Source of the DNA: Haplodiscus bocki | Lineage: Eukaryota | Direction of reading: 5' to 3' | Assembly: GCA_965655095.1 (NCBI GenBank) | Contig: OZ296651.1 | Location: 70,122,001 to 70,186,000, forward strand | DNA: 64,000 nt | In this document: positions 1,024-64,000 of the stretch, one piece after another | Layout: each line of letters opens with the position of its first letter | How positions within the stretch are numbered: the stretch's first letter is position 1 | Made by a program: the position numbers and the translations under genes | Notes under the pieces: model-generated | The model's database searches: none | What the model saw: only the letters and a program-made list of their open reading frames with translations | What the model was told of the DNA's origin: nothing

Positions 1024-1152
1024 TTTTTGATTCATACAATTTCATACGAGCATTATTTCAGTTTAATCGATCTCAAAAATTTCCTACACAAAGTAAATTC
1101 ATGCTTTGGTAATGAAATTCTTACAGTTTTCTTCGAAAAAAGTGTAACTAAC

Positions 1153-33096: not shown

Positions 33097-36000
33097 AAGA
33101 GGTATTAACTTAAAAGATGTATTAACTTCAAGGCTCAACTACAGTACCAACAAGCACAAAAGGAAGAGTTTGGGGTAGGTTTTCAGCGGACTTGCCTTAA
33201 AGAAAACTCTAATTCGAAGCTTCAACGTAAGGCTGGAGTTGATATTCCATACGAAGAGGATGCGGAACTTTACAGAACTTGGTTGAACAAGCACCAGATG
33301 AATTCAGCGACAAGCAGCATTGGGTACAACCTGTTTGAACTGAAGAGGTTTGTGGATCAGTTCCTTGAACTGAAGGAACCCTTACACCCCAACTGAACTT
33401 CATTCATTTTAGTGCTTCAATAAACGCAATGAAGCGCAACTACTACGAGTCAGTGCGTGCCAGAGAATTGCACAGCTTGTCATTTCGAGTTCAATAACTT
33501 CAAAGAAGGATGCCGCGAAGCTGCACCGCAGAGCGCGTGACTTCGTGGAAGAAGTTTTTCAGAAGCTGGAAGAAGGTGCATAGGAGGACCGCGATGATCA
33601 GTTGAAGTTCAAAGACCTAAAACAAGTCCAGATTTGTCTTTTTGTTCTCAGGAATGGTTGCCGGAACCCAACTGTCTTTAGCCTTCGAAGAGCCTACATG
33701 AAAAATTGCTTCTACGACGCTGACAAGCACCTCCTGGCTTTTCACATGGGCCCTGGAACTTTAGCTGGAGCTGAACCATATAGTGGTCGACTTTCACTGT
33801 TCATTGGGAGTGTAATGAAGCAGCTCATCGTAAACAGCTCTCGTGTTTGTTGTGTCCCCAAAAGTTTGCCCCAGAGTTTACCACAAGAAAACAGGTAAGA
33901 GAGTTCCATTGCCTGTCTAATAAGCCCTCTCTGAAAGTGAATCATAGTATACATATCAAAGGAGATAAAATTCAATTTGATCGACGAAGAAGCAAATGCT
34001 ACCCGTTATCGCCATGCACAATACTTGTGAACCAGAAGGTCAACCATGAAGAACATCCGCTCCAGTTGGAGTTAGTACGCACTAAAAAAGACTTGCCGGA
34101 GTCAATCACTCACTCTGTACGCAAAGTTGATCAAACAAACACCGCAGGAAATTTACTGAATTCTATCCAATCTCTTAAAAGAGGTATTAAATTCAAGGCT
34201 CAACTACAGTACCACCAAGCACAAAAGGAAGAGTTTGGGATAGGTTTTCAGCGGACTTGCCTTGAAGAAAACTCTAATTCGAAGCTTCAACGTAAGGCTG
34301 GAGTTGACATTCCATACGAAGAGGATGCGCAACTTTACAGAACTTGGTTGAACAAGCACCAGATGAATTCAGCGACAAGCAGCATTGGGTACAACCTGTT
34401 TGAACTGAAGACGTTTGTGGATCAGTTTCTTGAACTGAAGGAACCCTTACACTCCAACTGAACTTCATTCATTTTAGTGCTTCAATAAACGCAATGAAGC
34501 GCAACTACTACGAGTCACTGCGTGCCAGAGAATTGCACAGCTTGTCATTTCGAGTTCAATTACTTCAAAGAGGGATGCCGCGAAGCTGCACTGCAGAGCG
34601 CGTGACTTCGTGGAAGAAGTTTTTCAGAAGCTGGAAGAAGGTGCATAGGAGGACCGCGATGATCAGTCGAAGTTCAAAGACCTAAAACAAGTCCAGATAT
34701 GTCTTTTTGTTCTCAGGAACGGTTGCCGGAACCCAACTGTCTTTAGCCTTCGAAGAGCCTACATGAAGAATTGCTTCTACGACGCTGACAAGCACCTCCT
34801 GGCTTTTCACATGGGCCCTGGATCTAGCTGGAGCTGAACCATATAGTGGTCGACTCTCACTGTTCATCGGGAGTGTAATGAAGCAGCTCATCGTAAACAG
34901 CTCTCGTGTTTGTTGTGTCCCCAAAAGTTTGCCCCAGAGTTTACCACAAGAAAACAGGTAAGAGAGTTCCATTGCCTGTCTCATAAGCCCTCTCTGAAAG
35001 TGAATCATAGTATACATATCAAAGGAGATAAAATTCAATTTGATCGACGAAGAAGCAAATGCTACCCGTTATCGCCATGCACAATACTTGTGAACCAGAA
35101 GGTCAACCATGAAGAACATCCGCTCCAGTTGGAGTTAGTACGCACTAAAAAAGACTTGCCGGAGTCAATCACTCACTCTGTACGCAAAGTTGATCAAACA
35201 AACACCGCAGGAAATTTACTGAATTCTATCCAATCTCTTAAAAGAGGTATTAACTTCAAGGCTCAACTACAGTACCACCAAGCACAAAAGGATGAGTTTG
35301 GGATAGATTTTCAGCGGACTTGCCTTGAAGAAAACTCTAATGCGAAGCTTCAACGTAAGGCTGGAGTTGATATTCCATACGAAGAGGATGCGCAACTTTA
35401 CAGAACTTGGTTGAACAAGCACCAGATGAATTCAGCGACAAGCAGCACTGGGTACAACCTGTTTGAACTGAAGAGGTTTGTGGATCAGTTCCTTGAAATG
35501 AAGGAACCCTTACACCCCAACTGAACTTCATTCACTTTAGTGCTTCAATAAACGCAATGAAGCGCAACTACTACGAGTCACTGCGTGCCAGAGAATTGCA
35601 CAGCTTGTCATTTCGAGTTCAATTACTTCAAAGAGGGATGCCGCGAAGCTGCACTGCAGAGCGCGTGACTTCGTGGAAGAAGTTTTTCAGAAGCTGGAAG
35701 AAGGTGCATAGGAGGACCGCGATGATCAGTCGAAGTTCAAAGACCTAAAACAAGTCCAGATATGTCTTTTTGTTCTCAGGAACGGTTGCCGGAACCCAAC
35801 TGTCTTTAGCCTTCGAAGAGCCTACATGAAGAATTGCTTCTACGACGCTGACAAGCACCTCCTGGCTTTTCACATGGGCCCTGGATCTAGCTGGAGCTGA
35901 ACCATATAGTGGTCGACTCTCACTGTTCATCGGGAGTGTAATGAAGCAGCTCATCGTAAACAGCTCTCGTGTTTGTTGTGTCCCCAAAAGTTTGCCCCAG

Positions 36001-39000
36001 AACTGACTCCAAGAAAACACGTAAGAGAGTTCCATTGCCTGTCTCATAAGCCCTCTCTTAAAGTGAATCACAGAATACATATCAAAGGAGATAAAATTCA
36101 ATTTGATCGACGAAGAAGCAAATGCTACCCGTTTTCGCCATGCACAATACTTGTTAACCAGAAGGTCAACCATGAAGAACATCCGCTCCAGTTGGAGTTA
36201 GTACGCACTATAAAAGACTTGCCGGAGTCAATCACTCACTCTGTACGCAAAGTTGATCAAACAAACACCGCAGGAAATTTACTGAATTCTATCCAATCTC
36301 TTAAAAGAGGTATTAAATTCAAGGCTCAACTACAGTACCACCAAGCACAAAAGGAAGAGTTTGGGATAGGTTTTCAGCGGACTTGCCTTGAAGAAAACTC
36401 TAATTCGAAGCTTCAACGTAAGGCTGGAGTTGATATTCCATACGAAGAGGATGCGCAACTTTACAGAACTTGGTTGAACAAGCACCAGATGAATTCAGCG
36501 ACAAGCAGCATTGGGTACAACCTGTTTGAACTGAAGACGTTTGTGGATCAGTTTCTTGAACTGAAGGAACCCTTACACTCCAACTGAACTTCATTCATTT
36601 TAGTGCTTCAATAAACGCAATGAAGCGCAACTACTACGAGTCACTGCGTGCCAGAGAATTGCACAGCTAGTCATTTCGAGTTCAATTACTTCAAAGAGGG
36701 ATGCCGCGAAGCTGCACTGCAGAGCGCGTGACTTCGTGGAAGAAGTTTTTCAGAAGCTGGAAGAAGGTGCATAGGAGGACCGCGATGATCAGTCGAAGTT
36801 CAAAGACCTAAAACAAGTCCAGATATGTCTTTTTGTTCTCAGGAACGGTTGCCGGAACCCAACTGTCTTTAGCCTTCGAAGAGCCTACATGAAGAATTGC
36901 TTCTACGACGCTGACAAGCACCTCCTGGCTTTTCACATGGGCCCTGGATCTAGCTGGAGCTGAACCATATAGTGGTCGACTCTCACTGTTCATCGGGAGT
37001 GTAATGAAGCAGCTCATCGTAAACAGCTCTCGTGTTTGTTGTGTCCCCAAAAGTTTGCCCCAGAACTTACTCCAAGAAAACACGTAAGAGAGTTCCATTG
37101 CCTGTCTCATAAGCCCTCTCTTAAAGTGAATCACAGAATACATATCAAAGGAGATAAAATTCAATTTGATCGACGAAGAAGCAAATGCTACCCGTTTTCG
37201 CCATGCACAATACTTGTTAACCAGAAGGTCAACCATGAAGAACATCCGCTCCAGTTGGAGTTAGTACGCACTATAAAAGACTTGCCGGAGTCAATCACTC
37301 ACTCTGTACGCAAAGTTGATCAAACAAACACCGCAGGAAATTTACTGAATTCTATCCAATCTCTTAAAAGAGGTATTAAATTCAAGGCTCAACTACAGTA
37401 CCACCAAGCACAAAAGGAAGAGTTTGGGATAGGTTTTCAGCGGACTTGCCTTAAAGAAAACTCTAATTCGAAGCTCCAACGTAAGGCTGGAGTTGATATT
37501 CCATACGAAGAGGACGCGCAACTTTACAGAACTTGGTTGAACAAGCACCAGATGAATTCAGCGACAAGCAGCACTGGGTACAACCTGTTTGAACTGAAGA
37601 GGTTTGTGGATCAGTTCCTTGAACTGAAGGAACCCTTACACCCCAACTGAACTTCATTCACTTTAGTGCTTCAATAAACGCAATGAAGCGCAACTACTAC
37701 GAGTCACTGCGTGCCAGAGAATTGCACAGCTTTTCATTTCGAGTTCAATTACTTCAAAGAGGGATGCCGCGAAGCTGCACTGCAGAGCGCGTGACTTCGT
37801 GGAAGAAGTTTTTCAGAAGCTGGAAGAAGGTGCATAGGAGGACCGCGATGATCAGTCGAAGTTCAAAGACCTAAAACAAGTCCAGATATGTCTTTTTGTT
37901 CTCAGGAACGGTTGCCGGAACCCAACTGTCTTTAGCCTTCGAAGAGCCTACATGAAGAATTGCTTCTACGACGCTGACAAGCACCTCCTGGCTTTTCACA
38001 TGGGCCCTGGATCTAGCTGGAGCTGAACCATATAGTGGTCGACTCTCACTGTTCATCGGGAGTGTAATGAAGCAGCTCATCGTAAACAGCTCTCGTGTTT
38101 GTTGTGTCCCCAAAAGTTTGCCCCAGAACTTACTCCAAGAAAACACGTAAGAGAGTTCCATTGCCTGTCTCATAAGCCCTCTCTTAAAGTGAATCACAGA
38201 ATACATATCAAAGGAGATAAAATTCAATTTGATCGACGAAGAAGCAAATGCTACCCGTTTTCGCCATGCACAATACTTGTTAACCAGAAGGTCAACCATG
38301 AAGAACATCCGCTCCAGTTGGAGTTAGTACGCACTAAAAAAGACTTGCCGGAGTCAATCACTCACTCTGTACGCAAAGTTGATCAAACAAACACCGCAGG
38401 AAATTTACTGAATTCTATCCAATCTCTTAAAAGAGGTATTAAATTCAAGGCTCAACTACAGTACCACCAAGCACAAAAGGAAGAGTTTGGGATAGGTTTT
38501 CAGCGGACTTGCCTTGAAGAAAACTCTAATTCGAAGCTTCAACGTAAGGCTGGAGTTGATATTCCATATGAAGAGGATGCGCAACTTTACAGAACTTGGT
38601 TGAACAAGCACCAGATGAATTCAGCGACAAGCAGCATTGGGTACAACCTGTTTGAACTGAAGACGTTTGTGGATCAGTTTCTTGAACTGAAGGAACCCTT
38701 ACACTCCAACTGAACTTCATTCATTTTAGTGCTTCAATAAACGCAATGAAGCGCAACTACTACGAGTCACTGCGTGAAAGAGAATTGCACAGCTTGTCAT
38801 TTCGAGTTCAATTACTTCAAAGAGGGATGCCGCGAAGCTGCACTGCAGAGCGCGTGACTTCGTGGAAGAAGTTTTTCAGAAGCTGGAAGAAGGTGCATAG
38901 GAGGACCGCGATGATCAGTCGAAGTTCAAAGACCTAAAACAAGTCCAGATATGTCTTTTTGTTCTCAGGAACGGTTGCCGGAACCCAACTGTCTTTAGCC

Positions 39001-42000
39001 TTCGAAGAGCCTACAAGAAGAATTGCTTCTACGACGCTGACAAGCACCTCCTGGCTTTTCACATGGGCCCTGGATCTAGCTGGAGCTGAACCATATAGTG
39101 GTCGACTCTCACTGTTCATCGGGAGTGTAATGAAGCAGCTCATCGTAAACAGCTCTCGTGTTTGTTGTGTCCCCAAAAGTTTGCCCCAGAACTTACTCCA
39201 AGAAAACACGTAAGAGAGTTCCATTGCCTGTCTCATAAGCCCTCTCTTAAAGTGAATCATAGAATACATATCAAAGGAGATAAAATTCAATTTGATCGAC
39301 GAAGAAGCAAATGCTACCCGTTTTCGCCATGCACAATACTTGTTAACCAGAAGGTCAACCATGAAGAACATCCGCTCCAGTTGGAGTTAGTACGCACTAT
39401 AAAAGACTTGCCGGAGTCAATCACTCACTCTGTACGCAAAGTTGATCAAACAAACACCGCAGGAAATTTACTGAATTCTATCCAATCTCTTAAAAGAGGT
39501 ATTAAATTCAAGGCTCAACTACAGTACCACCAAGCACAAAAGGAAGAGTTTGGGATAGGTTTTCAGCGGACTTGCCTTGAAGAAAACTCTAATTCGAAGC
39601 TTCAACGTAAGGCTGGAGTTGATATTCCATATGAAGAGGATGCGCAACTTTACAGAACTTGGTTGAACAAGCACCAGATGAATTCAGCGACAAGCAGCAT
39701 TGGGTACAACCTGTTTGAACTGAAGACGTTTGTGGATCAGTTTCTTGAACTGAAGGAACCCTTACACTCCAACTGAACTTCATTCATTTTAGTGCTTCAA
39801 TAAACGCAATGAAGCGCAACTACTACGAGTCACTGCGTGAAAGAGAATTGCACAGCTTGTCATTTCGAGTTCAATTACTTCAAAGAGGGATGCCGCGAAG
39901 CTGCACTGCAGAGCGCGTGACTTCGTGGAAGAAGTTTTTCAGAAGCTGGAAGAAGGTGCATAGGAGGACCGCGATGATCAGTCGAAGTTCAAAGACCTAA
40001 AACAAGTCCAGATATGTCTTTTTGTTCTCAGGAACGGTTGCCGGAACCCAACTGTCTTTAGCCTTCGAAGAGCCTACATGAAGAATTGCTTCTACGACGC
40101 TGACAAGCACCTCCTGGCTTTTCACATGGGCCCTGGATCTAGCTGGAGCTGAACCATATAGTGGTCGACTCTCACTGTTCATCGGGAGTGTAATGAAGCA
40201 GCTCATCGTAAACAGCTCTCGTGTTTGTTGTGTCCCCAAAAGTTTGCCCCAGAACTTACTCCAAGAAAACACGTAAGAGAGTTCCATTGCCTGTCTCATA
40301 AGCCCTCTCTTAAAGTGAATCACAGAATACATATCAAAGGAGATAAAATTCAATTTGATCGACGAAGAAGCAAATGCTACCCGTTTTCGCCATGCACAAT
40401 ACTTGTTAACCAGAAGGTCAACCATGAAGAACATCCGCTCCAGTTGGAGTTAGTACGCACTATAAAAGACTTGCCGGAGTCAATCACTCACTCTGTACGC
40501 AAAGTTGATCAAACAAACACCGCAGGAAATTTACTGAATTCTATCCAATCTCTTAAAAGAGGTATTAAATTCAAGGCTCAACTACAGTACCACCAAGCAC
40601 AAAAGGAAGAGTTTGGGATAGGTTTTCAGCGGACTTGCCTTGAAGAAAACTCTAATTCGAAGCTTCAACGTAAGGCTGGAGTTGATATTCCATATGAAGA
40701 GGATGCGCAACTTTACAGAACTTGGTTGAACAAGCACCAGATGAATTCAGCGACAAGCAGCATTGGGTACAACCTGTTTGAACTGAAGACGTTTGTGGAT
40801 CAGTTTCTTGAACTGAAGGAACCCTTACACTCCAACTGAACTTCATTCATTTTAGTGCTTCAATAAACGCAATGAAGCGCAACTACTACGAGTCACTGCG
40901 TGAAAGAGAATTGCACAGCTTGTCATTTCGAGTTCAATTACTTCAAAGAGGGATGCCGCGAAGCTGCACTGCAGAGCGCGTGACTTCGTGGAAGAAGTTT
41001 TTCAGAAGCTGGAAGAAGGTGCATAGGAGGACCGCGATGATCAGTCGAAGTTCAAAGACCTAAAACAAGTCCAGATATGTCTTTTTGTTCTCAGGAACGG
41101 TTGCCGGAACCCAACTGTCTTTAGCCTTCGAAGAGCCTACATGAAGAATTGCTTCTACGACGCTGACAAGCACCTCCTGGCTTTTCACATGGGCCCTGGA
41201 TCTAGCTGGAGCTGAACCATATAGTGGTCGACTCTCACTGTTCATCGGGAGTGTAATGAAGCAGCTCATCGTAAACAGCTCTCGTGTTTGTTGTGTCCCC
41301 AAAAGTTTGCCCCAGAACTTACTCCAAGAAAACACGTAAGAGAGTTCCATTGCCTGTCTCATAAGCCCTCTCTTAAAGTGAATCACAGAATACATATCAA
41401 AGGAGATAAAATTCAATTTGATCGACGAAGAAGTAAATGCTACCCGTGTTCGCCATGCACAATACTTGTGAACCAGAAGGTCAACCATGAAGAACATCCG
41501 CTCCAGTTGGAGTTAGTACGCACTATAAAAGACTTGCCGGAGTCAATCACTCACTCTGTACGCAAAGTTGATCAAACAAACACCGCAGGAAATTTACTGA
41601 ATTCTATCCAATCTCTTAAAAGAGGTATTAAATTCAAGGCTCAACTACAGTACCACCAAGCACAAAAGGAAGAGTTTGGGATAGGTTTTCAGCGGACTTG
41701 CCTTGAAGAAAACTCTAATTCGAAGCTTCAACGTAAGGCTGGAGTTGATATTCCATACGAAGAGGATGCGCAACTTTACAGAACTTGGTTGAACAAGCAC
41801 CAGATGAATTCAGCGACAAGCAGCATTGGGTACAACCTGTTTGAACTGAAGAGGTTTGTGGATCAGTTCCTTGAACTGAAGGAACCCTTACACCCCAACT
41901 GAACTTCAATGATTTTAGTGCTTCAATAAACGCAATGAAGCGCAACTACTACGAGTCACTGCGTGCCAGAGAATTGCACAGCTTTTCATTTCGAGTTCAA

Positions 42001-45000
42001 TTACTTCAAAGAGGGATGCCGCGAAGCTGCACTGCAGAGCGCGTGACTTCGTGGAAGAAGTTTTTCAGAAGCTGGAAGAAGGTGCATAGGAGGACCGCGA
42101 TGATCAGTCGAAGTTCAAAGACCTAAAACAAGTCCAGATTTGTCTTTTTGTTCTCAGGAATGGTTGCCGGAACCCAACTGTCTTTAGCCTTCGAAGAGCC
42201 TACATGAAAAATTGCTTCTACGACGCTGACAAGCACCTCCTGGCTTTTCACATGGGCCCTGGAACTTTAGCTGGAGCTGAACCATATAGTGGTCGACTTT
42301 CACTGTTCATTGGGAGTGTAATGAAGCAGCTCATCGTAAACAGCTCTCGTGTTTGTTGTGTCCCCAAAAGTTTGCCCCAGAGTTTACCACAAGAAAACAG
42401 GTAAGAGAGTTCCATTGCCTGTCTAATAAGCCCTCTCTGAAAGTGAATCATAGTATACATATCAAAGGAGATAAAATTCAATTTGATCGACGAAGAAGCA
42501 AATGCTACCCGTTATCGCCATGCACAATACTTGTGAACCAGAAGGTCAACCATGAAGAACATCCGCTCCAGTTGGAGTTAGTACGCACTAAAAAAGACTT
42601 CCCGGAGTCAATCACTCACTCTGTACGCAAAGTTGATCAAACAAACACCGCAGGAAATTTACTGAATTCTATCCAATCTCTTAAAAGAGGTATTAAATTC
42701 AAGGCTCAACTACAGTACCACCAAGCACAAAAGGAAGAGTTTGGGATAGGTTTTCAGCGGACTTGCCTTGAAGAAAACTCTAATTCGAAGCTTCAACGTA
42801 AGGCTGGAGTTGATATTCCATACGAAGAGGATGCGCAACTTTACAGAACTTGGTTGAACAAGCACCAGATGAATTCAGCGACAAGCAGCATTGGGTACAA
42901 CCTGTTTGAACTGAAGACGTTTGTGGATCAGTTTCTTGAACTGAAGGAACCCTTACACTCCAACTGAACTTCATTCATTTTAGTGCTTCAATAAACGCAA
43001 TGAAGCGCAACTACTACGAGTCACTGCGTGCCAGAGAATTGCACAGCTTGTCATTTCGAGTTCAATTACTTCAAAGAGGGATGCCGCGAAGCTGCACTGC
43101 AGAGCGCGTGACTTCGTGGAAGAAGTTTTTCAGAAGCTGGAAGAAGGTGCATAGGAGGACCGCGATGATCAGTCGAAGTTCAAAGACCTAAAACAAGTCC
43201 AGATATGTCTTTTTGTTCTCAGGAACGGTTGCCGGAACCCAACTGTCTTTAGCCTTCGAAGAGCCTACATGAAGAATTGCTTCTACGACGCTGACAAGCA
43301 CCTCCTGGCTTTTCACATGGGCCCTGGATCTAGCTGGAGCTGAACCATATAGTGGTCGACTCTCACTGTTCATCGGGAGTGTAATGAAGCAGCTCATCGT
43401 AAACAGCTCTCGTGTTTGTTGTGTCCCCAAAAGTTTGCCCCAGAGTTTACCACAAGAAAACAGGTAAGAGAGTTCCATTGCCTGTCTCATAAGCCTGTCT
43501 TAAAGTGAATCACAGAATACATATCAAAGGAGAGAAAATTCAATTTGATCGACGAAGAAGCAAATGCTACCCGTTATCGCCATGCACAATACTTGTGAAC
43601 CACAAGGTCAACCATGAAGAACATCCGCTCCAGTTGGAGTTAGTACGCACTATAAAAGACTTGCCGGAGTCAATCACTCACTCTGTACGCAAAGTTGATC
43701 AAACAAACACCGCAGGAAATTTACTGAATTCTATCCAATCTCTTAAAAGAGGTATTAAATTCAAGGCTCAACTACAGTACCACCAAGCACAAAAGGAAGA
43801 GTTTGGGATAGGTTTTCAGCGGACTTGCCTTGAAGAAAACTCTAATTCGAAGCTTCAACGTAAGGCTGGAGTTGATATTCCATATGAAGAGGATGCGCAA
43901 CTTTACAGAACTTGGTTGAACAAGCACCAGATGAATTCAGCGACAAGCAGCATTGGGTACAACCTGTTTGAACTGAAGACGTTTGTGGATCAGTTTCTTG
44001 AACTGAAGGAACCCTTACACTCCAACTGAACTTCATTCATTTTAGTGCTTCAATAAACGCAATGAAGCGCAACTACTACGAGTCACTGCGTGAAAGAGAA
44101 TTGCAAAGCTTGTCATTTCGAGTTCAATTACTTCAAAGAGGGATGCCGCGAAGCTGCACTGCAGAGCGCGTGACTTCGTGGAAGAAGTTTTTCAGAAGCT
44201 GGAAGAAGGTGCATAGGAGGACCGCGATGATCAGTCGAAGTTCAAAGACCTAAAACAAGTCCAGATATGTCTTTTTGTTCTCAGGAACGGTTGCCGGAAC
44301 CCAACTGTCTTTAGCCTTCGAAGAGCCTACATGAAGAATTGCTTCTACGACGCTGACAAGCACCTCCTGGCTTTTCACATGGGCCCTGGATCTAGCTGGA
44401 GCTGAACCATATAGTGGTCGACTCTCACTGTTCATCGGGAGTGTAATGAAGCAGCTCATCGTAAACAGCTCTCGTGTTTGTTGTGTCCCCAAAAGTTTGC
44501 CCCAGAACTTACTCCAAGAAAACACGTAAGAGAGTTCCATTGCCTGTCTCATAAGCCCTCTCTTAAAGTGAATCACAGAATACATATCAAAGGAGATAAA
44601 ATTCAATTTGATCGACGAAGAAGCAAATGCTACCCGTTTTCGCCATGCACAATACTTGTTAACCAGAAGGTCAACCATGAAGAACATCCGCTCCAGTTGG
44701 AGTTAGTACGCACTATAAAAGACTTGCCGGAGTCAATCACTCACTCTGTACGCAAAGTTGATCAAACAAACACCGCAGGAAATTTACTGAATTCTATCCA
44801 ATCTCTTAAAAGAGGTATTAAATTCAAGGCTCAACTACAGTACCACCAAGCACAAAAGGAAGAGTTTGGGATAGGTTTTCAGCGGACTTGCCTTAAAGAA
44901 AACTCTAATTCGAAGCTCCAACGTAAGGCTGGAGTTGATATTCCATACGAAGAGGACGCGCAACTTTACAGAACTTGGTTGAACAAGCACCAGATGAATT

Positions 45001-54000: not shown

Positions 54001-57000
54001 ATGAAGCAGCTCATCGTAAACAGCTCTCGTGTTTGTTGTGTCCCTAAAAGTTTGCCCCAGAGTTTACCCCAAGAAAAAACGTGAGAGAGTTCCATTGCCT
54101 GTCTCATAAGCCCTCTCTGAAAGTGAATCAGAGTATACATATCAAAGGAGATAAAATTCAATTTGATCGACGAAGAAGTAAATGCTACCCATGTTCGCCA
54201 TGCACAATACTTGTGAACCAGAAGGTCAACCATGAAGAACATCCGCTCCAGTTGGAGTTAGTACGCACTATAAAAGACTTGCCGGAGTCAATCACTCACT
54301 CTGTACGCAGAGTTAATCAAACAAACACCGCAGGAAATTTACTGAATTCTATCCAATCTCTTAAAAGAGGTATTAAATTCAAGGCTCAACTACAGTACCA
54401 CCAAGCACAAAAGGAAGAGTTTGGGATAGGTTTTCAGCGGACTTGCCTTGAAGAAAACTCTAATTCGAAGCTTCAACGTAAGGCTGGAGTTGATATTCCA
54501 TACGAAGAGGATGCGCAACTTTACAGAACTTGGTTGAACAAGCACTAGATGAATTCAGCGACAAGCAGCATTGGGTACAACTTGTATGAACTGAAGAGGT
54601 TTTTGGATCAGTTCCTTGAACTGAAGGAACCCTTACACCCCAACTGAACTTCATTCACTTTAGTGCTTCAATAAACGCAATGAAGCGCAACTGCTACGAG
54701 TCACTGCGTGCCAGAGAATTGCACAGCTTGTCATTTCGAGTTCAATTACTTCAAAGAAGGATGCAAAAAGCTGCACTGCAGAGCGCGTGACTTCGTGGAA
54801 GAAGTTTTTCAGAAGCTGGAAGAAGGTGCATAGGAGGACCGCGATGATCAGTCGAAGTTCAAAGACCTAAAACAAGTCCAGATATGTCTTTTTGTTCTCA
54901 GGAACGGTTGCCGGAACCCAACTGTCTTTAGCATTCGAAAAGCCTACATGAAGAATTGCTTCTACGACGCTGACAAGCACCTCCTGGCTTTTCACATGGG
55001 CCCTGGAACTTTAGCTGGAGCTGAACCATATAGTGGTCGACTTTCACTGTTCATTGGGAGTGTAATGAAGCAGCTCATCGTAAACAGCCCTCGTGTTTGT
55101 TGTGTCCCCAAAAGTTTGCCCAAGAGTTTACCACAAGAAAACAGGTAAGAGAGTTCCATTGCCTGTCTCATAAGCCCTCTCTGAAAGTGAATCATAGTAT
55201 ACATATCAAAGGAGATAAAATTCAATTTGATCGACGAAGAAGTAAATGCTACCCATGTTCGCCATGCACAATACTTGTGAACCAGAAGGTCAACCATGAA
55301 GAACATCCGCTCCAGTTGGAGTTAGTACGCACTATAAAAGACTTGCCGGAGTCAATCACTCATTCTGTACGCAAAGTTGATCAAACAAACACCGCAGGAA
55401 ATTTACTGAATTCTGTGCAATCGCTTAAAAGAGGTTTTAACTTCAAGGCTCAACTACAGTACCAACAAGCACAAGAGGAAGAGTTTGGGGTAGGTTTTCG
55501 GCGGACTTGCCTTAAAGAAAACTCTAATTCGAAGCTTCAACGTAAGGCTGGAGTTGATATTCCATACGAAGAGGATGCGCAACTTTACAGAACTTGGTTG
55601 AACAAGCACTAGATGAATTCAGCGACAAGCAGCATTGGGTACAACTTGTATGAACTGAAGAGGTTTTTGGATCAGTTCCTTGAACTGAAGGAACCCTTAC
55701 ACCCCAACTGAACTTCATTCACTTTAGTGCTTCAATAAACGCAATGAAGCGCAACTGCTACGAGTCACTGCGTGCCAGAGAATTGCACAGCTTGTCATTT
55801 CGAGTTCAATTACTTCAAAGAAGGATGCAAAAAGCTGCACTGCAGAGCGCGTGACTTCGTGGAAGAAGTTTTTCAGAAGCTGGAAGAAGGTGCATAGGAG
55901 GACCGCGATGATCAGTCGAAGTTCAAAGACCTAAAACAAGTCCAGATATGTCTTTTTGTTCTCAGGAACGGTTGCCGGAACCCAACTGTCTTTAGCATTC
56001 GAAAAGCCTACATGAAGAATTGCTTCTACGACGCTGACAAGCACCTCCTGGCTTTTCACATGGGCCCTGGAACTTTAGCTGGAGCTGAACCATATAGTGG
56101 TCGACTTTCACTGTTCATTGGGAGTGTAATGAAGCAGCTCATCGTAAACAGCCCTCGTGTTTGTTGTGTCCCCAAAAGTTTGCCCAAGAGTTTACCACAA
56201 GAAAACAGGTAAGAGAGTTCCATTGCCTGTCTCATAAGCCCTCTCTGAAAGTGAATCATAGTATACATATCAAAGGAGATAAAATTCAATTTGATCGACG
56301 AAGAAGCAAATGCTACCCGTTATCGCCATGCACAATACTTGTGAACCACAAGGTCAACCATGAAGAACATCCGCTCCAGTTGGAGTTAGTACGCACTAAA
56401 AAAGACTTGCCGGAGTCAATCACTCACTCTGTACGCAAGGTTGATCAAACAAACACCGCAGGAAATTTACTGAATTCTATCCAATCTCTTAAAAGAGGTA
56501 TTAACTTCAAGGCTCAACTACAGTACCACCAAGCACAAAAGGAAGAGTTTGGGGTAGGTTTTCAGCGGACTTGCCCTGAAGAAAACTCTAATTCGAAGCT
56601 TCAACGTAAGGCTGGAGTTGATATTCCATACGACGAGGATGCGCAACTTTACAGAACTTGGTTGAACAAGCACCAGATGAATTCAGCGACAAGCAGCATT
56701 GGGTACAACCTGTTTGAACTGAAGACGTTTGTGGATCAGTTTCTTGAACTGAAGGAACCCTTACACCCCAACTGAACTTCATTCACTTTAGTGTTTCAAT
56801 AAACGCAATGAAGCGCAACTACTACGAGTCACTGCGTGCCAGAGAATTGCACAGCTTTTCATTTCGAGTTCAATTACTTCAAAGAAGGATGCCGCGAAGC
56901 TGCACTGCAGAGCGCGTGACTTCGTGGAACAAGTTTTTCAGAAGCTGGAAGAAGGTGCATAGGAGGACCGCGATGATCAGTCGAAGTTCAAAGACCTAAA

Positions 57001-60000
57001 ACAAGTCCAGATATGTCTTTTTGTTCTCAGGAACGGTTGCCGGAACCCAACTGTCTTTAGCATTCGAAAAGCCTACATGAAGAATTGCTTCTACGACGCT
57101 GACAAGCACCTCCTGGCTTTTCACATGGGCCCTGGAACTAGCTGGAGCTGAACCATATAGTGGTCGACTCTCACTGTTCATCGGGAGTGTAATGAAGCAG
57201 CTCATCGTAAACAGCTCTCGTGTTTGTTGTGTCCCCAAAAGTTTGCCCCAGAACTTACTCCAAGAAAACACGTAAGAGAGTTCCATTGCCTGTCTCATAA
57301 GCCCTCTCTTAAAGTGAATCACAGAATACATATCAAAGGAGATAAAATTCAATTTGATCGACGAAGAAGCAAATGCTACCCGTTTTCGCCATGCACAATA
57401 CTTGTTAACCAGAAGGTCAACCATGAAGAACATCCGCTCCAGTTGGAGTTAGTACGCACTATAAAAGACTTGCCGGAGTCAATCACTCACTCTGTACGCA
57501 AAGTTGATCAAACAAACACCGCAGGAAATTTACTGAATTCTATCCAATCTCTTAAAAGAGGTATTAACTTCAAGGCTCAACTACAGTACCACCAAGCACA
57601 AAAGGAAGAGTTTGGGGTAGGTTTTCAGCGGAGTTGCCTTAAAGAAAACTCTAATTCGAAGCTTCAACGTAAGGCTGGAGTTGATATTCCATACGAAGAG
57701 GACGCGCAACTTTACAGAACTTGGTTGAACAAGCACCAGATGAATTCAGCGACAAGCAGCACTGGGTACAACCTGTTTGAACAGAAGAGGTTTGTGGATC
57801 AGTTCCTTGAACTGAAGGAACCCTTACACCCCAACTGAACTTCATTCACTTTAGTGCTTCAATAAACGCAATGAAGCGCAACTGCTACGAGTCACTGCGT
57901 GCCAGAGAATTGCACAGCTTGTCATTTCGAGTTCAATTACTTCAAAGAAGGATGCAAAAAGCTGCACTGCAGAGCGCGTGACTTCGTGGAAGAAGTTTTT
58001 CAGAAGCTGGAAGAAGGTGCATAGGAGGACCGCGATGATCAGTCGAAGTTCAAAGACCTAAATTAAGTCCAGATATGTCTTTTTGTTCTCAGGAACGGTT
58101 GCCGGAACCCAACTGTCTTTAGCATTCGAAAAGCCTACATGAAGAATTGCTTCTACGACGCTGACAAGCACCTCCTGGCTTTTCACATGGGCCCTGGAAC
58201 TTTAGCTGGAGCTGAACCATATAGTGGTCGACTTTCACTGTTCATTGGGAGTGTAATGAAGCAGCTCATCGTAAACAGCCCTCGTGTTTGTTGTGTCCCC
58301 AAAAGTTTGCCCAAGAGTTTACCACAAGAAAACAGGTAAGAGAGTTCCATTGCCTGTCTCATAAGCCCTCTCTGAAAGTGAATCATAGTATACATATCAA
58401 AGGAGATAAAATTCAATTTGATCGACGAAGAAGCAAATGCTACCCGTTATCGCCATGCACAATACTTGTGAACCACAAGGTCAACCATGAAGAACATCCG
58501 CTCCAGTTGGAGTTAGTACGCACTAAAAAAGACTTGCCGGAGTCAATCACTCACTCTGTACGCAAGGTTGATCAAACAAACACCGCAGGAAATTTACTGA
58601 ATTCTATCCAATCTCTTAAAAGAGGTATTAACTTCAAGGCTCAACTACAGTACCACCAAGCACAAAAGGAAGAGTTTGGGGTAGGTTTTCAGCGGACTTG
58701 CCCTGAAGAAAACTCTAATTCGAAGCTTCAACGTAAGGCTGGAGTTGATATTCCATACGACGAGGATGCGCAACTTTACAGAACTTGGTTGAACAAGCAC
58801 CAGATGAATTCAGCGACAAGCAGCATTGGGTACAACCTGTTTGAACTGAAGACGTTTGTGGATCAGTTTCTTGAACTGAAGGAACCCTTACACCCCAACT
58901 GAACTTCATTCACTTTAGTGTTTCAATAAACGCAATGAAGCGCAACTACTACGAGTCACTGCGTGCCAGAGAATGGCACAGCTTTTCATTTCGAGTTCAA
59001 TTACTTCAAAGAAGGATGCCGCGAAGCTGCACTGCAGAGCGCGTGACTTCGTGGAACAAGTTTTTCAGAAGCTGGAAGAAGGTGCATAGGAGGACCGCGA
59101 TGATCAGTCGAAGTTCAAAGACCTAAAACAAGTCCAGATATGTCTTTTTGTTCTCAGGAACGGTTGCCGGAACCCAACTGTCTTTAGCATTCGAAAAGCC
59201 TACATGAAGAATTGCTTCTACGACGCTGACAAGCACCTCCTGGCTTTTCACATGGGCCCTGGAACTAGCTGGAGCTGAACCATATAGTGGTCGACTCTCA
59301 CTGTTCATCGGGAGTGTAATGAAGCAGCTCATCGTAAACAGCTCTCGTGTTTGTTGTGTCCCCAAAAGTTTGCCCCAGAGTTTACTCCAAGAAAACACGT
59401 AAGAGAGTTCCATTGCCTGTCTCATAAGCCTGTCTTAAAGTGAATCACAGAATACATATCAAAGGAGAGAAAATTCAATTTGATCGACGAAGAAGCAAAT
59501 GCTACCCGTTTTCGCCATGCACAATACTTGTTAACCAGAAGGTCAACCATGAAGAACATCCGCTCCAGTTGGAGTTAGTACGCACTATAAAAGACTTGCC
59601 GGAGTCAATCACTCACTCTGTACGCAAAGTTGATCAAACAAACACCGCAGGAAATTTACTGAATTCTATCCAATCTCTTAAAAGAGGTATTAACTTCAAG
59701 GCTCAACTACAGTACCACCAAGCACAAAAGGAAGAGTTTGGGGTAGGTTTTCAGCGGACTTGCCTTAAAGAAAACTCTAATTCGAAGCTTCAACGTAAGG
59801 CTGGAGTTGATATTCCATACGACGAGGATGCGCAACTTTACAGAACTTGGTTGAACAAGCACCAGATGAATTCAGCGACAAGCAGCATTGGGTACAACCT
59901 GTTTGAACTGAAGACGTTTGTGGATCAGTTTCTTGAACTGAAGGAACCCTTACACCCCAACTGAACTTCATTCACTTTAGTGTTTCAATAAACGCAATGA

Positions 60001-63000
60001 AGCGCAACTACTACGAGTCACTGCGTGCCAGAGAATGGCACAGCTTTTCATTTCGAGTTCAATTACTTCAAAGAAGGATGCCGCGAAGCTGCACTGCAGA
60101 GCGCGTGACTTCGTGGAACAAGTTTTTCAGAAGCTGGAAGAAGGTGCATAGGAGGACCGCGATGATCAGTCGAAGTTCAAAGACCTAAAACAAGTCCAGA
60201 TATGTCTTTTTGTTCTCAGGAACGGTTGCCGGAACCCAACTGTCTTTAGCATTCGAAAAGCCTACATGAAGAATTGCTTCTACGACGCTGACAAGCACCT
60301 CCTGGCTTTTCACATGGGCCCTGGAACTAGCTGGAGCTGAACCATATAGTGGTCGACTCTCACTGTTCATCGGGAGTGTAATGAAGCAGCTCATCGTAAA
60401 CAGCTCTCGTGTTTGTTGTGTCCCCAAAAGTTTGCCCCAGAGTTTACTCCAAGAAAACACGTAAGAGAGTTCCATTGCCTGTCTCATAAGCCTGTCTTAA
60501 AGTGAATCACAGAATACATATCAAAGGAGAGAAAATTCAATTTGATCGACGAAGAAGCAAATGCTACCCGTTTTCGCCATGCACAATACTTGTTAACCAG
60601 AAGGTCAACCATGAAGAACATCCGCTCCAGTTGGAGTTAGTACGCACTATAAAAGACTTGCCGGAGTCAATCACTCACTCTGTACGCAAAGTTGATCAAA
60701 CAAACACCGCAGGAAATTTACTGAATTCTATCCAATCTCTTAAAAGAGGTATTAACTTCAAGGCTCAACTACAGTATCACCAAGCACAAAAGGAAGAGTT
60801 TGGGGTAGGTTTTCAGCGGACTTGCCTTAAAGAAAACTCTAATTCGAAGCTTCAACGTAAGGCTGGAGTTGATATTCCATACGAAGAGGACGCGCAACTT
60901 TACAGAACTTGGTTGAACAAGCACCAGATGAATTCAGCGACAAGCAGCACTGGGTACAACCTGTTTGAACTGAAGAGGTTTGTGGATCAGTTCCTTGAAA
61001 TGAAGGAACCCTTACACCCCAACTGAACTTCATTCACTTTAGTGCTTCAATAAACGCAATGAAGCGCAACTACTACGAGTCACTGCGTGCCAGAGAATTG
61101 CACAGCTTGTCATTTCGAGTTCAATTACTTCAAAGAAGGATGCCGCGAAGCTGCACTGCAGAGCGTGTGACTTCGTGGAAGAAGTTTTTCAGAAGCTGGA
61201 AGAAGGTGCATAGGAGGACCGCGATGATCAGTCGAAGTTCAAAGACCTAAAACAAGTCCAGATATGTCTTTTTGTTCTCAGGAACGGTTGCCGGAACCCA
61301 ACTGTCTTTAGCCTTCGAAGAGCCTACATGAAGAATTGCTTCAACGACGCTGACAAGCACCTCCTGGCTTTTCACATGGGCCCTGGAACTAGCTGGAGCT
61401 GAACCATATAGTGGTCGACTCTCACTGTTCATCAGGAGTGTAATGAAGCAGCTCATCGTAAACAGCTCTCGTGTTTGTTGTGTCCCCAAAAGTTTGCCCC
61501 AGAGTTTACTCCAAGAAAACACGTAAGAGAGTTCCATTGCCTGTCTCATAAGCCTGTCTTAAAGTGAATCACAGAATACATATCAAAGGAGATAAAATTC
61601 AATTTGATCGACGAAGAAGCAAATGCTACCCGTTTTCGCCATGCACAATACTTGTTAACCAGAAGGTCAACCATGAAGAACATCCGCTCCAGTTGGAGTT
61701 AGTACGCACTATAAAAGACTTGCCGGAGTCAATCACTCACTCTGTACGCAAAGTTGATCAAACAAACACCGCAGGAAATTTACTGAATTCTATCCAATCT
61801 CTTAAAAGAGGTATTAACTTCAAGGCTCAACTACAGTACCACCAAGCACAAAAGGAAGAGTTTGGGGTAGGTTTTCAGCGGACTTGCCTTAAAGAAAACT
61901 CTAATTCGAAGCTCCAACGTAAGGCTGGAGTTGATATTCCATACGAAGAGGACGCGCAACTTTACAGAACTTGGTTGAACAAGCACCAGATGAATTCAGC
62001 GACAAGCAGCACTGGGTACAACCTGTTTGAACTGAAGAGGTTTGTGGATCAGTTCCTTGAACTGAAGGAACCCTTACACCCCAACTGAACTTCATTCACT
62101 TTAGTGCTTCAATAAACGCAATGAAGCGCAACTACTACGAGTCACTGCGTGCCAGAGAATTGCACAGCTTGTCATTTCGAGTTCAATTACTTCAAAGAGG
62201 GATGCCGCGAAGCTGCACTGCAGAGCGCGTGACTTCGTGGAAGAAGTTTTTCAGAAGCTGGAAGAAGGTGCATAGGAGGACCGCGATGATCAGTCGAAGT
62301 TCAAAGACCTAAAACAAGTCCAGATATGTCTTTTTGTTCTCAGGAACGGTTGCCGGAACCCAACTGTCTTTAGCATTCGAAAAGCCTACATGAAGAATTG
62401 CTTCTACGACGCTGACAAGCACCTCCTGGCTTTTCACATGGGCCCTGGAACTAGCTGGAGCTGAACCATATAGTGGTCGACTCTCACTGTTCATCGGGAG
62501 TGTAATGAAGCAGCTCATCGTAAACAGCTCTCGTGTTTGTTGTGTCCCCAAAAGTTTGCCCCAGAGTTTACTCCAAGAAAACACGTAAGAGAGTTCCATT
62601 GCCTGTCTCATAAGCCTGTCTTAAAGTGAATCACAGAATACATATCAAAGGAGAGAAAATTCAATTTGATCGACGAAGAAGCAAATGCTACCCGTTTTCG
62701 CCATGCACAATACTTGTTAACCAGAAGGTCAACCATGAAGAACATCCGCTCCAGTTGGAGTTAGTACGCACTATAAAAGACTTGCCGGAGTCAATCACTC
62801 ACTCTGTACGCAAAGTTGATCAAACAAACACCGCAGGAAATTTACTGAATTCTATCCAATCTCTTAAAAGAGGTATTAACTTCAAGGCTCAACTACAGTA
62901 CCACCAAGCACAAAAGGAAGAGTTTGGGGTAGGTTTTCAGCGGACTTGCCTTAAAGAAAACTCTAATTCGAAGCTTCAACGTAAGGCTGGAGTTGATATT

Positions 63001-64000
63001 CCATACGAAGAGGACGCGCAACTTTACAGAACTTGGTTGAACAAGCACCAGATGAATTCAGCGACAAGCAGCACTGGGTACAACCTGTTTGAACTGAAGA
63101 GGTTTGTGGATCAGTTCCTTGAAATGAAGGAACCCTTACACCCCAACTGAACTTCATTCACTTTAGTGCTTCAATAAACGCAATGAAGCGCAACTACTAC
63201 GAGTCACTGCGTGCCAGAGAATTGCACAGCTTGTCATTTCGAGTTCAATTACTTCAAAGAAGGATGCCGCGAAGCTGCACTGCAGAGCGTGTGACTTCGT
63301 GGAAGAAGTTTTTCAGAAGCTGGAAGAAGGTGCATAGGAGGACCGCGATGATCAGTCGAAGTTCAAAGACCTAAAACAAGTCCAGATATGTCTTTTTGTT
63401 CTCAGGAACGGTTGCCGGAACCCAACTGTCTTTAGCCTTCGAAGAGCCTACATGAAGAATTGCTTCAACGACGCTGACAAGCACCTCCTGGCTTTTCACA
63501 TGGGCCCTGGAACTAGCTGGAGCTGAACCATATAGTGGTCGACTCTCACTGTTCATCAGGAGTGTAATGAAGCAGCTCATCGTAAACAGCTCTCGTGTTT
63601 GTTGTGTCCCCAAAAGTTTGCCCCAGAGTTTACTCCAAGAAAACACGTAAGAGAGTTCCATTGCCTGTCTCATAAGCCTGTCTTAAAGTGAATCACAGAA
63701 TACATATCAAAGGAGATAAAATTCAATTTGATCGACGAAGAAGCAAATGCTACCCGTTTTCGCCATGCACAATACTTGTTAACCAGAAGGTCAACCATGA
63801 AGAACATCCGCTCCAGTTGGAGTTAGTACGCACTATAAAAGACTTGCCGGAGTCAATCACTCACTCTGTACGCAAAGTTGATCAAACAAACACCGCAGGA
63901 AATTTACTGAATTCTATCCAATCTCTTAAAAGAGGTATTAACTTCAAGGCTCAACTACAGTACCACCAAGCACAAAAGGAAGAGTTTGGGGTAGGTTTTC
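33097..64000 (+). repeat. Head-to-tail tandem array (satellite) of ~1063-bp monomers, about 29 copies, running off the window end
   Basis: The same ORF set recurs every 1055-1065 bp (e.g. 204-aa ORF ends at 34461, 35524, 36587, 37650 ... 63150); monomers differ only by scattered SNPs and small indels. Confidence 0.99.
33260..34180 (+). pseudogene. Tyrosine recombinase (Crypton-like YR) pseudogene forming the satellite monomer (first copy shown; present in every monomer)
   Basis: Core-binding-like helices LYRTWLNKH..SSIGYNLFELKRFVDQFL; box I LFVLRNGCR (R at 33662); ANATRYRH (R at 34010); ITHSVRKVDQTN (H at 34111, with Asn at +9, position 34138, where the catalytic Tyr is expected). Frameshifts and stops are shared by the copies. 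Confidence 0.7.

What the first reader, a model, noticed from the sequence alone, without database searches (positions are those of the whole stretch)
33097..64000. A 31-kb+ satellite whose ~1063-bp monomer is one fossil tyrosine-recombinase gene
Seen in sequence: stitching three frames of the monomer gives, in order, W..K..S.SSIGYNLFELKRFVDQFL, LFVLRNGCRNPTVFSL, GPGTLAG..RLSLFIGSVMKQL, ANATRYRH and LPESITHSVRKVDQTN. R1-R2 spacing is about 116 codons, and His to the expected-Tyr position is exactly 9 codons. Established knowledge: tyrosine recombinases have R...HxxR...H/W-x8-Y (lambda Int H333/Y342, Cre W315/Y324), and Crypton-type YR elements are thought to move via circular intermediates. 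Inference: a YR mobile-element gene was amplified, possibly via a circle or rolling-circle route, into a long gene-derived satellite. None of the ORF-track peptides reveals this identity alone.
Basis: partly seen in the sequence, partly recalled or inferred. Interest (0 to 1): 0.92.

Follow-up and report, generated by a model that had tools for sequence, protein, structure and literature searches.

The report
Satellite built from a recombinase-gene fragment
A tandem array about 56 kb long repeats a 1,063-bp decayed internal piece of a zinc-finger/tyrosine-recombinase-like transposon gene, so it is a transposon-derived satellite, a known kind of repeat, and not a whole fossil recombinase gene in each unit.

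Summary
From 33109 to the window end lie 28 full and 2 partial head-to-tail monomers of 1055-1065 bp, with mean identity 97.3%. All the quoted peptides are present.

- **Gene origin:** the monomer is gene-derived. It is co-linear, through at least 3 frameshifts and in-frame stops, with residues ~149-511 of 812-820-aa proteins P0012 and P0014. Those proteins come from SET + zinc-finger + recombinase-like elements in another assembly. An exhaustive phmmer search gave E 7e-10, and a frameshift-aware alignment scored 407 against 45 +/- 5 for shuffles.
- **What the monomer holds:** two zinc-finger motifs, a linker, the N-terminal domain, and the first third of the catalytic domain with the first arginine box.
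- **What it lacks:** the xxR, His and Tyr part of the catalytic domain.
'ANATRYRH' is an out-of-frame reading of the second zinc finger. 'ITHSVRKVDQTN' is linker.
- **The real tail:** the LGH-x8-Y motif occurs once, just past the array's far end, about 25 kb beyond the window. The array therefore grew inside a decayed parent copy.
- **Selection:** substitutions are almost even over codon positions, so the array is not a coding sequence under selection.

The tyrosine-recombinase identity of the parent family rests on language-model neighbours and invariant motifs. HMM and AlphaFold tests were blank or failed.

The scan noted the same array from the adjacent window (s1-381251).

The parts
32917..33099 (+). 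Old diverged relic of monomer positions 548-735, directly left of the array. It keeps an older reading frame ('AELILHSTRLQDFKVL', like P0012 'GEMIVESKGLSDFVALK').
   Evidence: Local alignment gives 77% identity over 180 columns, score 79 against a maximum of 19 in 100 shuffles. tblastn places P0012 262-316 on 32930-33088 with E 3e-4.
33109..64000 (+). Tandem array of the 1063-bp monomer: a partial unit, 28 full units and a partial unit. It continues beyond the window.
   Evidence: The continuation and the right end at L005:12146 are.
40000..41062 (+). Reference monomer used for all coordinates below.
40162..40836 (+). 225-codon stop-to-stop open frame, open in about half of the units. It covers the zinc fingers, the linker and the N-terminal domain, matching P0012 137-354. 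It is partly an accident: codons around 40672-40726 are out of the ancestral frame, because a 1-nt insertion compensates an older shift.
   Evidence: phmmer E 7.4e-10 to P0012, 6.5e-7 to P0014 and 8.4e-7 to P0015, each over almost the full length. Searches show the older frame 'RMAELILHVKRLRNFTKLG' in L001 and in the relic.
40222..40287 (+). C2H2 zinc finger, C-x2-C-x12-H-x4-H ('CLLCPQKFAPELTPRKHVREFH'), with the same spacing as P0012 149-170.
   Evidence: ZFAT finger, E 0.69; zf-C2H2/zf-BED hits on P0012 145-171 and P0014 208-229.
40375..40434 (+). Second Cys/His motif ('CYPFSPCTILVNQKVNHEEH'), matching P0014 'CLECLMIVNQQHKHRADH'.
40471..40518 (+). 'LPESITHSVRKVDQTN'. This is linker, matching P0012 235-251 'MPQEFMARVYDASKENT', and not the His...Tyr motif.
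40723..40818 (+). N-terminal (core-binding-like) domain motif 'WLNKHQMNSATSSIGYNLFELKTFVDQFLELK', matching P0012 317-350 and P0014 'WLLSHEKLKTGKTYQSNLNELQQFVERFLECK'.
40892..41197 (+). Second frame, matching P0012 377-481 at 36% identity with two in-frame stops. It ends in the first arginine box 'ICLFVLRNGCRNPTVFSLRRAYMKNCFYDADKHLLAFHMGP', which is 56% identical to P0012 441-481. It crosses the arbitrary monomer boundary at 41062/41063.
   Evidence: tblastn, combined E 8e-29.
40145..40222 (+). Third frame: 'GAEPYSGRLSLFIGSVMKQLIVNSSR', matching P0012 486-511. This is the last gene-derived codons of the unit.
40218..40226 (+). Head-to-tail junction of the unit: parent codon ~511 is joined to codon ~149, the first Cys of the finger. 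The position is good to a few bases.
   Evidence: The two homologies meet here in different frames.
40000..40449 (-). 150-codon antisense open frame. It has no relatives outside the satellite and is taken as a chance open frame opposite decayed coding DNA.
   Evidence: no Pfam family.

Best explanation
The array is a non-coding, transposon-derived macrosatellite. A resident copy of a mobile element carried a long gene with zinc fingers and a tyrosine-recombinase-like domain. Relatives of that element also carry a SET domain. A 1,063-bp internal segment of the gene, codons ~149 to ~511, was duplicated in tandem. The segment holds two zinc-finger motifs, a linker, the N-terminal DNA-binding-type domain and the first third of the catalytic domain with its first arginine. 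The duplicate then expanded to about 53 units at this locus by unequal exchange and block duplication, with homogenisation in the middle and decay at the edges. A second, more diverged array lies on another contig. The units cannot make a recombinase. They lack the xxR, His and Tyr part, they carry fixed frameshifts and stops, and they drift almost neutrally.

Shown: the tandem structure, the gene origin, which part of the gene is present, the decay, and the parent gene's real 3' end next to the array.

Inferred: that the parent family is a true tyrosine recombinase, and that growth was by local unequal exchange and not through a circle.
For: Structure.

Gene origin: an exhaustive phmmer search of 1.84 billion proteins with the 225-aa frame finds, apart from copies of the satellite, only P0012 (E 7.4e-10, query 8-223 on residues 136-354), P0014 and P0015. 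tblastn places P0012 137-363 and 377-481 co-linearly on one unit with combined E 8e-29. A frameshift-aware alignment scores 407 for P0012 (shuffles 44.9 +/- 5.2) and 263 for P0014 (shuffles 43.5 +/- 8.0), and ends at P0012 residues ~511-521.

Parent family: L002 and L003 carry two SET exons (Pfam E 6e-6, 9e-5 and 4e-5) upstream of the 812/820-aa ORF. No reverse-transcriptase family was seen in the nine ORFs scanned (of those of 90 aa or more), and 535-554-bp tandem repeats flank the unit.

Recombinase nature: R, TxxR, GH and Y (with His to Tyr = 9) are invariant in three sequences that are 35% identical. In two separate Atlas searches, every neighbour cluster with a common Pfam family carried PF00589, ResT-TelK_cat, NDC10_II or Phage_integr_3; the remaining clusters had none. 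The predicted model of the nearest neighbour matches PF00589 clusters at TM 0.51-0.58.

In-place origin: the last unit is joined in frame to 'DSQLGHGRRTATDHY'. A C-terminal tail 'FYEVVRNQLRNLK' follows it. Alignment scores are 65 and 77 against shuffles of 33 +/- 5. A 77% relic lies at the left edge, and the edge units are only 93.6% and 90% identical.

No selection: differences fall 62/57/87 on codon positions 1/2/3. The frame is broken in the diverged array.
Against: No profile or structure test places the parent family among tyrosine recombinases. Pfam, NCBIfam and PHROGs gave no recombinase hit at E up to 10, and a PDB profile search and hhalign against Cre and lambda Int gave nothing. Both AlphaFold models were unusable (pLDDT 36 and 45). 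The fold search gave only noise, with XerH and XerA at ranks 18-38 and E above 6.

The first His of the canonical HxxR is Thr in all three family members. A catalytic Lys could not be placed with confidence.

No intact parent of the monomer's own lineage was found; the nearest proteins are 25-56% identical.

Nothing here separates unequal exchange from rolling-circle copying in place. The slight third-position excess (87 of 206) could be a trace of past selection.
Confidence: 0.7

Rival explanations
1. One reading: a 1,063-bp circle excised from the element (a Crypton-type circular intermediate or an eccDNA) was copied by rolling-circle replication. The multimer was then integrated, giving the array in one step.
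For: The unit is a circular permutation with one sharp junction. A second array of the same unit exists on another contig, so the repeat has moved or been duplicated at least once. Relatives of the parent assemble as a 'circular' 18.9-kb contig at 238x.
Against: The array is bordered by the same gene's 3' end in frame and by an old relic of the unit. That is what local amplification inside a resident copy predicts. Any tandem duplication gives a single junction. Block duplications and diverged edges are the signature of unequal exchange. No circle was observed.
Confidence: 0.15
2. Recombinase-made arrays: codon ~511-513 of the gene is a preferred cleavage or crossover site of the element's own recombinase. 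Aberrant joining of this site to secondary sites creates deleted head-to-tail multimers.
For: A second array built from a different lineage of the family (L004, 2.55-2.9-kb units) breaks the gene after Ala513. The window's unit breaks at ~511, within 2-3 codons. The two lineages are too diverged to share an ancestral array: 62% DNA identity in the best stretch only.
Against: There are only two cases. The partner breakpoints differ, and no shared sequence motif at the joints was seen by eye. Chance is about 1-4%, not negligible. Activity of the recombinase was not shown.
Confidence: 0.1
3. The 204-225-codon frame is a working gene array that encodes a small zinc-finger protein.
For: The frame is open in about half of the units, and a gene caller predicts it.
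Against: The units are 95-100% identical, so shared openness is expected. The frame contains an out-of-frame stretch relative to the ancestral protein. It is broken in the 81-90% identical array. Substitutions are nearly even across codon positions. No RNA evidence was obtained.
Confidence: 0.03
4. The motifs are chance similarities in an ordinary non-genic satellite.
For: Pfam finds nothing in any frame of the unit.
Against: There is full-length, co-linear and highly significant similarity to three proteins.
Confidence: 0.01

Closest known systems
Transposon-derived satellite DNAs, including those related to tyrosine-recombinase elements: Crassostrea gigas CgiSat40 (673 bp, listed as DNA/Crypton) and CgiSat44 (748 bp, LTR/DIRS) in PMC8268682, and Tribolium TCAST2 (159 bp, 70% similar to Crypton-2_TCa) in PMC4316633
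   Same: A tandem repeat whose unit is a piece of a mobile element, with kb-scale or sub-kb units and no coding function.
   Different: Here the unit can be mapped codon by codon to an internal 45% of the element's gene. The array still sits beside the parent gene's 3' end. The parent is not a typical Crypton: it has no DUF3504 or PF00589 match.
Crypton DNA transposons (Kojima and Jurka 2011, PMC3212892)
   Same: A eukaryotic element with a tyrosine-recombinase-type gene and no reverse-transcriptase family in the ORFs scanned. The language-model neighbours include NDC10_II, which that paper derives from Crypton recombinases.
   Different: Animal Cryptons match DUF3504 with E <= 8e-12 according to that paper. 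P0012 and P0014 match neither DUF3504 nor PF00589 at E up to 10. The relatives carry SET exons and zinc fingers and are flanked by ~550-bp tandem repeats. Termini and target sites were not examined here.
SET + zinc-finger + tyrosine-recombinase element family noted elsewhere in this genome by the scan (s1-364275 and others)
   Same: The same domain order (zinc fingers, then a recombinase-like domain, with SET upstream) as in the relatives L002, L003 and L008 that match the monomer.
   Different: The satellite unit keeps no SET part and no catalytic tail. Its own parent lineage was not recovered intact.
Gene-bearing macrosatellites such as human D4Z4 (from general knowledge, not tested here)
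   Same: A kb-scale tandem unit derived from a gene, with an open frame in many units.
   Different: D4Z4 units hold a complete, expressible ORF. These units hold a truncated, frameshifted fragment.

Membership tests
Satellite / macrosatellite DNA | Long head-to-tail array of near-identical units | tested here: met
   28 full units in the window with mean identity 97.3%, and 11.4 more units in L005.
Transposon-derived satellite | The unit is homologous to part of a mobile element | tested here: met
   Co-linear with residues ~149-511 of the gene of SET + zinc-finger + recombinase-like elements. The mobility of those elements was not tested here; it rests on a scan note (s1-364275).
Tyrosine recombinase (the monomer as a complete gene) | First catalytic arginine box | tested here: met
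   'LFVLRNGCRNPTV' aligns to the invariant 'F(R/Q)N(G/A)CRNG'.
Tyrosine recombinase (the monomer as a complete gene) | HxxR box, then His/Trp, then the nucleophilic Tyr 9 residues later | tested here: not met
Homology of the unit stops at parent residue ~511. The family's TxxR, GH and Y lie at residues about 584-622 of P0012.
Tyrosine recombinase (the parent family P0012/P0014/L008) | Conserved R ... (H)xxR ... H-x8-Y | tested here: met
   R, TxxR, GH and Y are invariant in 3 sequences at 35% identity, with R to H = 26 and H to Y = 9. The first His is Thr. The window locus's own tail reads 'LGHGRRTATDHY'.
Tyrosine recombinase (the parent family P0012/P0014/L008) | Profile match to PF00589 or related families | tested here: not met
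   No hit at E up to 10 in Pfam, NCBIfam, PHROGs or a PDB profile search.
Tyrosine recombinase (the parent family P0012/P0014/L008) | Catalytic-domain fold | tested here: inconclusive
   The AlphaFold models had pLDDT 36 and 45 and Foldseek gave noise. Indirect support: all Atlas neighbour clusters with a common Pfam family are in the recombinase clan, and the nearest neighbour's model matches PF00589 clusters at TM 0.51-0.58.
Crypton | Tyrosine recombinase without reverse transcriptase, and similarity to DUF3504/Crypton recombinases | tested here: inconclusive
   No reverse-transcriptase family in the nine ORFs of L002 and L003 that were scanned, of those of 90 aa or more. There is no DUF3504 match either. 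Termini and target duplications were not examined.
Rolling-circle / eccDNA-born array | Existence of the unit as a circle, or one-step multimer insertion at an unrelated site | not testable with these tools
   The runs found are served only as contigs of unknown library type. The flanks hold parent-gene remnants.

The most novel reading that the evidence does not exclude
Two arrays derived from different lineages of this gene family, in two assemblies, break the gene within 2-3 codons of each other (residue ~511 here, 513 in L004). This could mark the element's own recombination or cleavage site inside its recombinase gene. Such satellites would then be by-products of aberrant site-specific recombination: a recombinase that seeds tandem arrays of its own gene fragment.
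Probability: 0.1. Interest if true: 0.75.

Novelty: new member of a known kind. Interest (0 to 1): 0.4.

Why it matters
It is a clean, codon-resolved example of how a satellite is born from the inside of a transposon gene. The parent gene's own 3' end is still attached to the array, and a relic sits at the other edge. A diverged sister array allows the dating of frameshifts. That makes the order of events (duplication, expansion, edge decay, dispersal) reconstructible.

It also corrects a tempting misreading. A circularly permuted unit lets motif hunting assemble a full catalytic signature that is not there.

The parent family (SET + zinc fingers + a recombinase-like domain with no Pfam match) is the more unusual object, but it belongs to other findings of this scan. 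The near-coincident breakpoint in an independent array is the one point that could lift this above an ordinary transposon-derived satellite.

Tried and rejected
- **Pfam on monomer frames:** scanning ten stop-to-stop frames of the monomer at E up to 10 gave nothing.
- **Word-indexed protein searches:** with the 225-aa frame, with P0012 330-660 and with the P0012/P0014 alignment, these found only satellite copies, P0012 itself, and two fragments of the L004-type repeat.
- **P0013 and P0016:** these hits in the exhaustive search are low-complexity, multi-stretch matches and were set aside.
- **Confirming the recombinase fold failed:** two AlphaFold jobs with 2 and 3 sequences gave pLDDT 36 and 45. 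Foldseek against the PDB had no hit below E 2.5. hhalign against Cre and lambda Int gave probability below 1%. tblastn against 50,697 phage genomes found no integrase. A metagenome locus scan found no relatives.
- **Flank searches:** a search for the 5' part of the gene or SET remnants in the left flank, and for SET in the right flank, was blank.
- **(TAG)n microsatellites:** these are reported by a scan note as the family's target, but none were found at this locus or in L002, L003 or L008.
- **Copy number:** the runs are served as contigs only. Summed word depth in the array is roughly 15-45 times that of the single-copy flank, which the tool warns is not a copy number. No RNA evidence could be obtained.
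- **Deliberately not done:** I built no consensus and no repaired frame. All comparisons used natural pieces or frameshift-aware alignment.
Full report
**1. The observation**

The k-mer distance spectrum of the window has one dominant family of peaks at 1062-1065 bp, with multiples. A single monomer (40000-41062) tiles 33109-64000 without interruption on the plus strand. There is a 511-bp partial unit, 28 full units of 1055-1065 bp, and a 627-bp partial unit cut by the window end. All are 95.4-100% identical to the query.

Mean pairwise identity is 97.3%. There is no regular higher-order period. Pairs of near-identical units 2, 3, 7 and 8 units apart show recent block duplications. G+C rises from about 0.37 to 0.44 at the array.

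Directly to the left lies a 183-bp relic of monomer positions 548-735 at 77% identity (32917-33099; score 79 against at most 19 for shuffles).

**2. Is the unit gene-derived?**

Pfam finds nothing in any stop-to-stop frame of the unit. A word-indexed search finds only copies of the satellite itself on two contigs of one ENA assembly.

The exhaustive phmmer search of 1.84 billion cluster representatives with the 225-codon frame (40162-40836) adds three real proteins:
- P0012 (812 aa), E 7.4e-10, query 8-223 on residues 136-354.
- P0014 (820 aa), E 6.5e-7.
- P0015 (316 aa), E 8.4e-7.

In the next frame, tblastn shows 40892-41197 matching P0012 377-481 at 36% identity; the stretch 441-481 is 56% identical. 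The combined E is 8e-29.

My frameshift-aware alignment threads one unit through P0012 137 to about 511 in four frame segments, with in-frame stops. It scores 407 against 44.9 +/- 5.2 for shuffled DNA. P0014 scores 263 against 43.5 +/- 8.0. The unit is beyond doubt a decayed piece of a gene of this family.

**3. Which piece?**

In gene order the unit holds:
- A C2H2 finger with the family's exact spacing (40222-40287).
- A second Cys/His motif (40375-40434, 'CYPFSPCTILVNQKVNHEEH', against P0014 'CLECLMIVNQQHKHRADH').
- A linker that includes 'LPESITHSVRKVDQTN' (P0012 235-251).
- The N-terminal domain motif 'WLNKHQMNSATSSIGYNLFELKTFVDQFLELK' (P0012 317-350).
- A poorly conserved stretch with stops.
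- The first arginine box 'LFVLRNGCRNPTVFSL' (P0012 441-456).
- 'GAEPYSGRLSLFIGSVMKQLIVNSSR' (P0012 486-511).

At about 40220 the homology jumps back to the first cysteine of the finger (P0012 Cys149). This is the head-to-tail junction.

The unit therefore covers about 45% of the gene and ends before the family's TxxR, GH and Y positions. Its 'H...9...N' lies in the linker. Because the unit is circularly permuted, the finger and linker part could be placed after the arginine box and mistaken for the catalytic tail.

Scan note s1-381328 reads the long frame as a catalytic tail running into the next copy's N-terminal domain. That is wrong for the same reason.

**4. The long frame is an accident**

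The diverged array (L001) and the left relic keep an older frame, 'R(M)AELILH.KRLRNFTKLG'. This matches P0014 'RLAEMLKESVYLTDFNKLE' far better than the window's 'RKAGVDIPYEEDAQLYRTW'. The window lineage gained one base that happens to bridge an older frameshift and opens 225 codons.

Differences between the window and the two L001 subfamilies, and among the window's units, fall 62/57/87 on codon positions 1/2/3. This is close to even. In the 81-90% identical array the frame is broken in most units. There is no sign of coding constraint.

**5. The parent family**

P0012, P0014 and P0015 (with its downstream ORF) lie on contigs of another ENA assembly (L002, L003, L008). In L002 and L003 the long ORF is preceded, on the same strand, by two exons of a SET domain (Pfam E 5.7e-6, 8.7e-5 and 3.5e-5). 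No reverse-transcriptase family was found in the nine ORFs of these loci that I scanned, out of those of 90 aa or more. The unit is flanked by 535-554-bp tandem repeats. L003 comes from an 18.9-kb contig labelled circular at 238x.

This matches the SET + zinc-finger + tyrosine-recombinase elements that the scan noted elsewhere in this genome. One note has a follow-up that calls them a 7-kb mobile element (s1-364275). I did not see the (TAG)n target it reports at any locus I fetched.

**6. Is the family a tyrosine recombinase?**

For:
- In three sequences that are 35% identical, an Arg in 'CRNG', an Arg in 'T..RK..TSY', 'GH', and a Tyr nine residues after that His are all invariant. The Arg-to-His distance is 26.
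- Two separate language-model searches, with P0012 340-680 and P0014 470-692, were run. Every neighbour cluster with a common Pfam family carried PF00589, ResT-TelK_cat, NDC10_II or Phage_integr_3; the remaining clusters had none.
- The confident Atlas model of the nearest neighbour (score 0.95, 186 shared features) matches PF00589 clusters at TM 0.51-0.58, and chordate SET-domain proteins at 0.77.
- NDC10 is itself Crypton-derived according to PMC3212892.

Against or blank:
- No match at E up to 10 to PF00589, DUF3504, NCBIfam or PHROG integrase models. No match of a two-sequence profile to any PDB chain.
- hhalign against Cre and lambda Int gave nothing.
- The AlphaFold models with 2 and 3 sequences were unusable, and the fold search was noise.

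I put the recombinase reading at about 0.8.

**7. Context of the array**

The array continues on the same contig and ends at L005:12146, at monomer position 428. The last two units are only 93.6% and 90% identical.

A scan note on the neighbouring window (s1-381251) claimed catalytic His/Tyr at the array end. My first tblastn at E 0.01 missed it. A more permissive search and translation show that the last unit runs in frame from '...QKVNH' into 'DSQLGHGRRTATDHY'. After two shifts come 'DDDLYFLDKQLAK...' and 'FYEVVRNQLRNLK', which match the family's LGH-x8-Y motif and its C-terminal tail. Alignment scores are 65 and 77 against 33 +/- 5 for shuffles.

So the array lies inside a decayed copy of its own parent gene. 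The segment between codon ~512 and five codons before LGH, which would hold TxxR, is deleted. The left flank and right flank hold no SET remnant, and the left flank holds no 5' gene part.

This favours local duplication and unequal exchange over insertion of a rolling-circle product at a foreign site, without excluding rolling-circle copying in place.

**8. Other copies**

A second array on a 608-kb contig of the same assembly has two subfamilies, 81-83% and 89-90% identical to the window's unit. It is split by a 3.45-kb insertion.

In the four DNA data sets that hold the stretch, the summed contig word depth over the array is roughly 15-45 times that of the single-copy flank. That suggests tens to perhaps a hundred units genome-wide and not a dominant satellite, though the tool warns that this is not a copy number. 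No RNA evidence was obtainable.

**9. An unexplained coincidence**

In the other assembly, L004 holds a 2.55-2.9-kb tandem unit built from a P0012-like lineage. The unit contains gene residues 220/234-513, then 164 bp of unmatched DNA, then pieces of the region upstream of and within the SET exons.

Its gene homology stops after 'NKNFA' (Ala513). The window's stops at about residue 511. The two lineages share only 62% DNA identity in their best 145 bp, so a common ancestral array is unlikely. Two breaks within three codons have a chance of the order of 1-4%. This could mark a hot spot, for instance the element's own crossover site. I could not test that.

**10. Comparison with what is known, and verdict**

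Satellites derived from mobile elements are well known. Satellite families annotated as Crypton- or DIRS-related have been listed in the oyster satellitome, and a Crypton-like stretch is reported in Tribolium TCAST2 (PMC8268682, PMC4316633).

This is a new, unusually well-resolved member of that kind, from an unusual parent family. It is not a whole fossil recombinase gene per unit, and nothing indicates a function.

Interest is moderate (0.4). The breakpoint coincidence is the only lead to something new.

Noticed in passing
window 31091-31484: A stretch of about 400 bp has summed contig word depth of 860-5200, against 10-60 in the neighbouring single-copy DNA. Many contigs break into A-rich loose ends at 31306-31310 and 31456. 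This looks like a very high-copy short dispersed repeat (SINE- or MITE-like).
   Followed up: no
window 10870-10940 with 11627-11719, and 26010-26083 with 26764-26888: Two pairs of 15-16-bp tandem-repeat blocks are reverse complements of each other, about 690 bp and 680 bp apart. These are foldback-like units with inverted subterminal repeats.
   Followed up: no
L001:16630-20079 (ENA ERZ26859043 ctg88678): A 3.45-kb insertion splits a unit of the second array between monomer positions 216 and 614. It carries two minus-strand ORFs (176 and 339 aa) with no Pfam family.
   Followed up: partly
L003 (ENA ERZ25074608 ctg173537_238x_c): An 18.9-kb contig labelled circular at 238x coverage holds SET exons, the 820-aa zinc-finger/recombinase-like ORF and a 553-bp tandem repeat. 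It is either a collapsed head-to-tail array of whole elements or an episome.
   Followed up: partly
L004:500-16000 (ENA ERZ25074608 ctg185445): A 2.55-2.9-kb tandem repeat is built from gene residues 220/234-513 of a P0012-like copy plus deleted upstream element DNA. It breaks the gene within 2-3 codons of the window satellite's junction.
   Followed up: partly
L002:1-2500 and 12500-18500; L003:3500-6500: Tandem repeats of 535-554 bp flank the SET + recombinase-like unit in the relatives. They show no similarity to the gene.
   Followed up: partly
window 1148-2311 (minus strand): A 387-codon single-exon protein-kinase-like ORF with a hydrophobic N-terminus (translation seen). The scan already noted it as s1-381364.
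   Followed up: no
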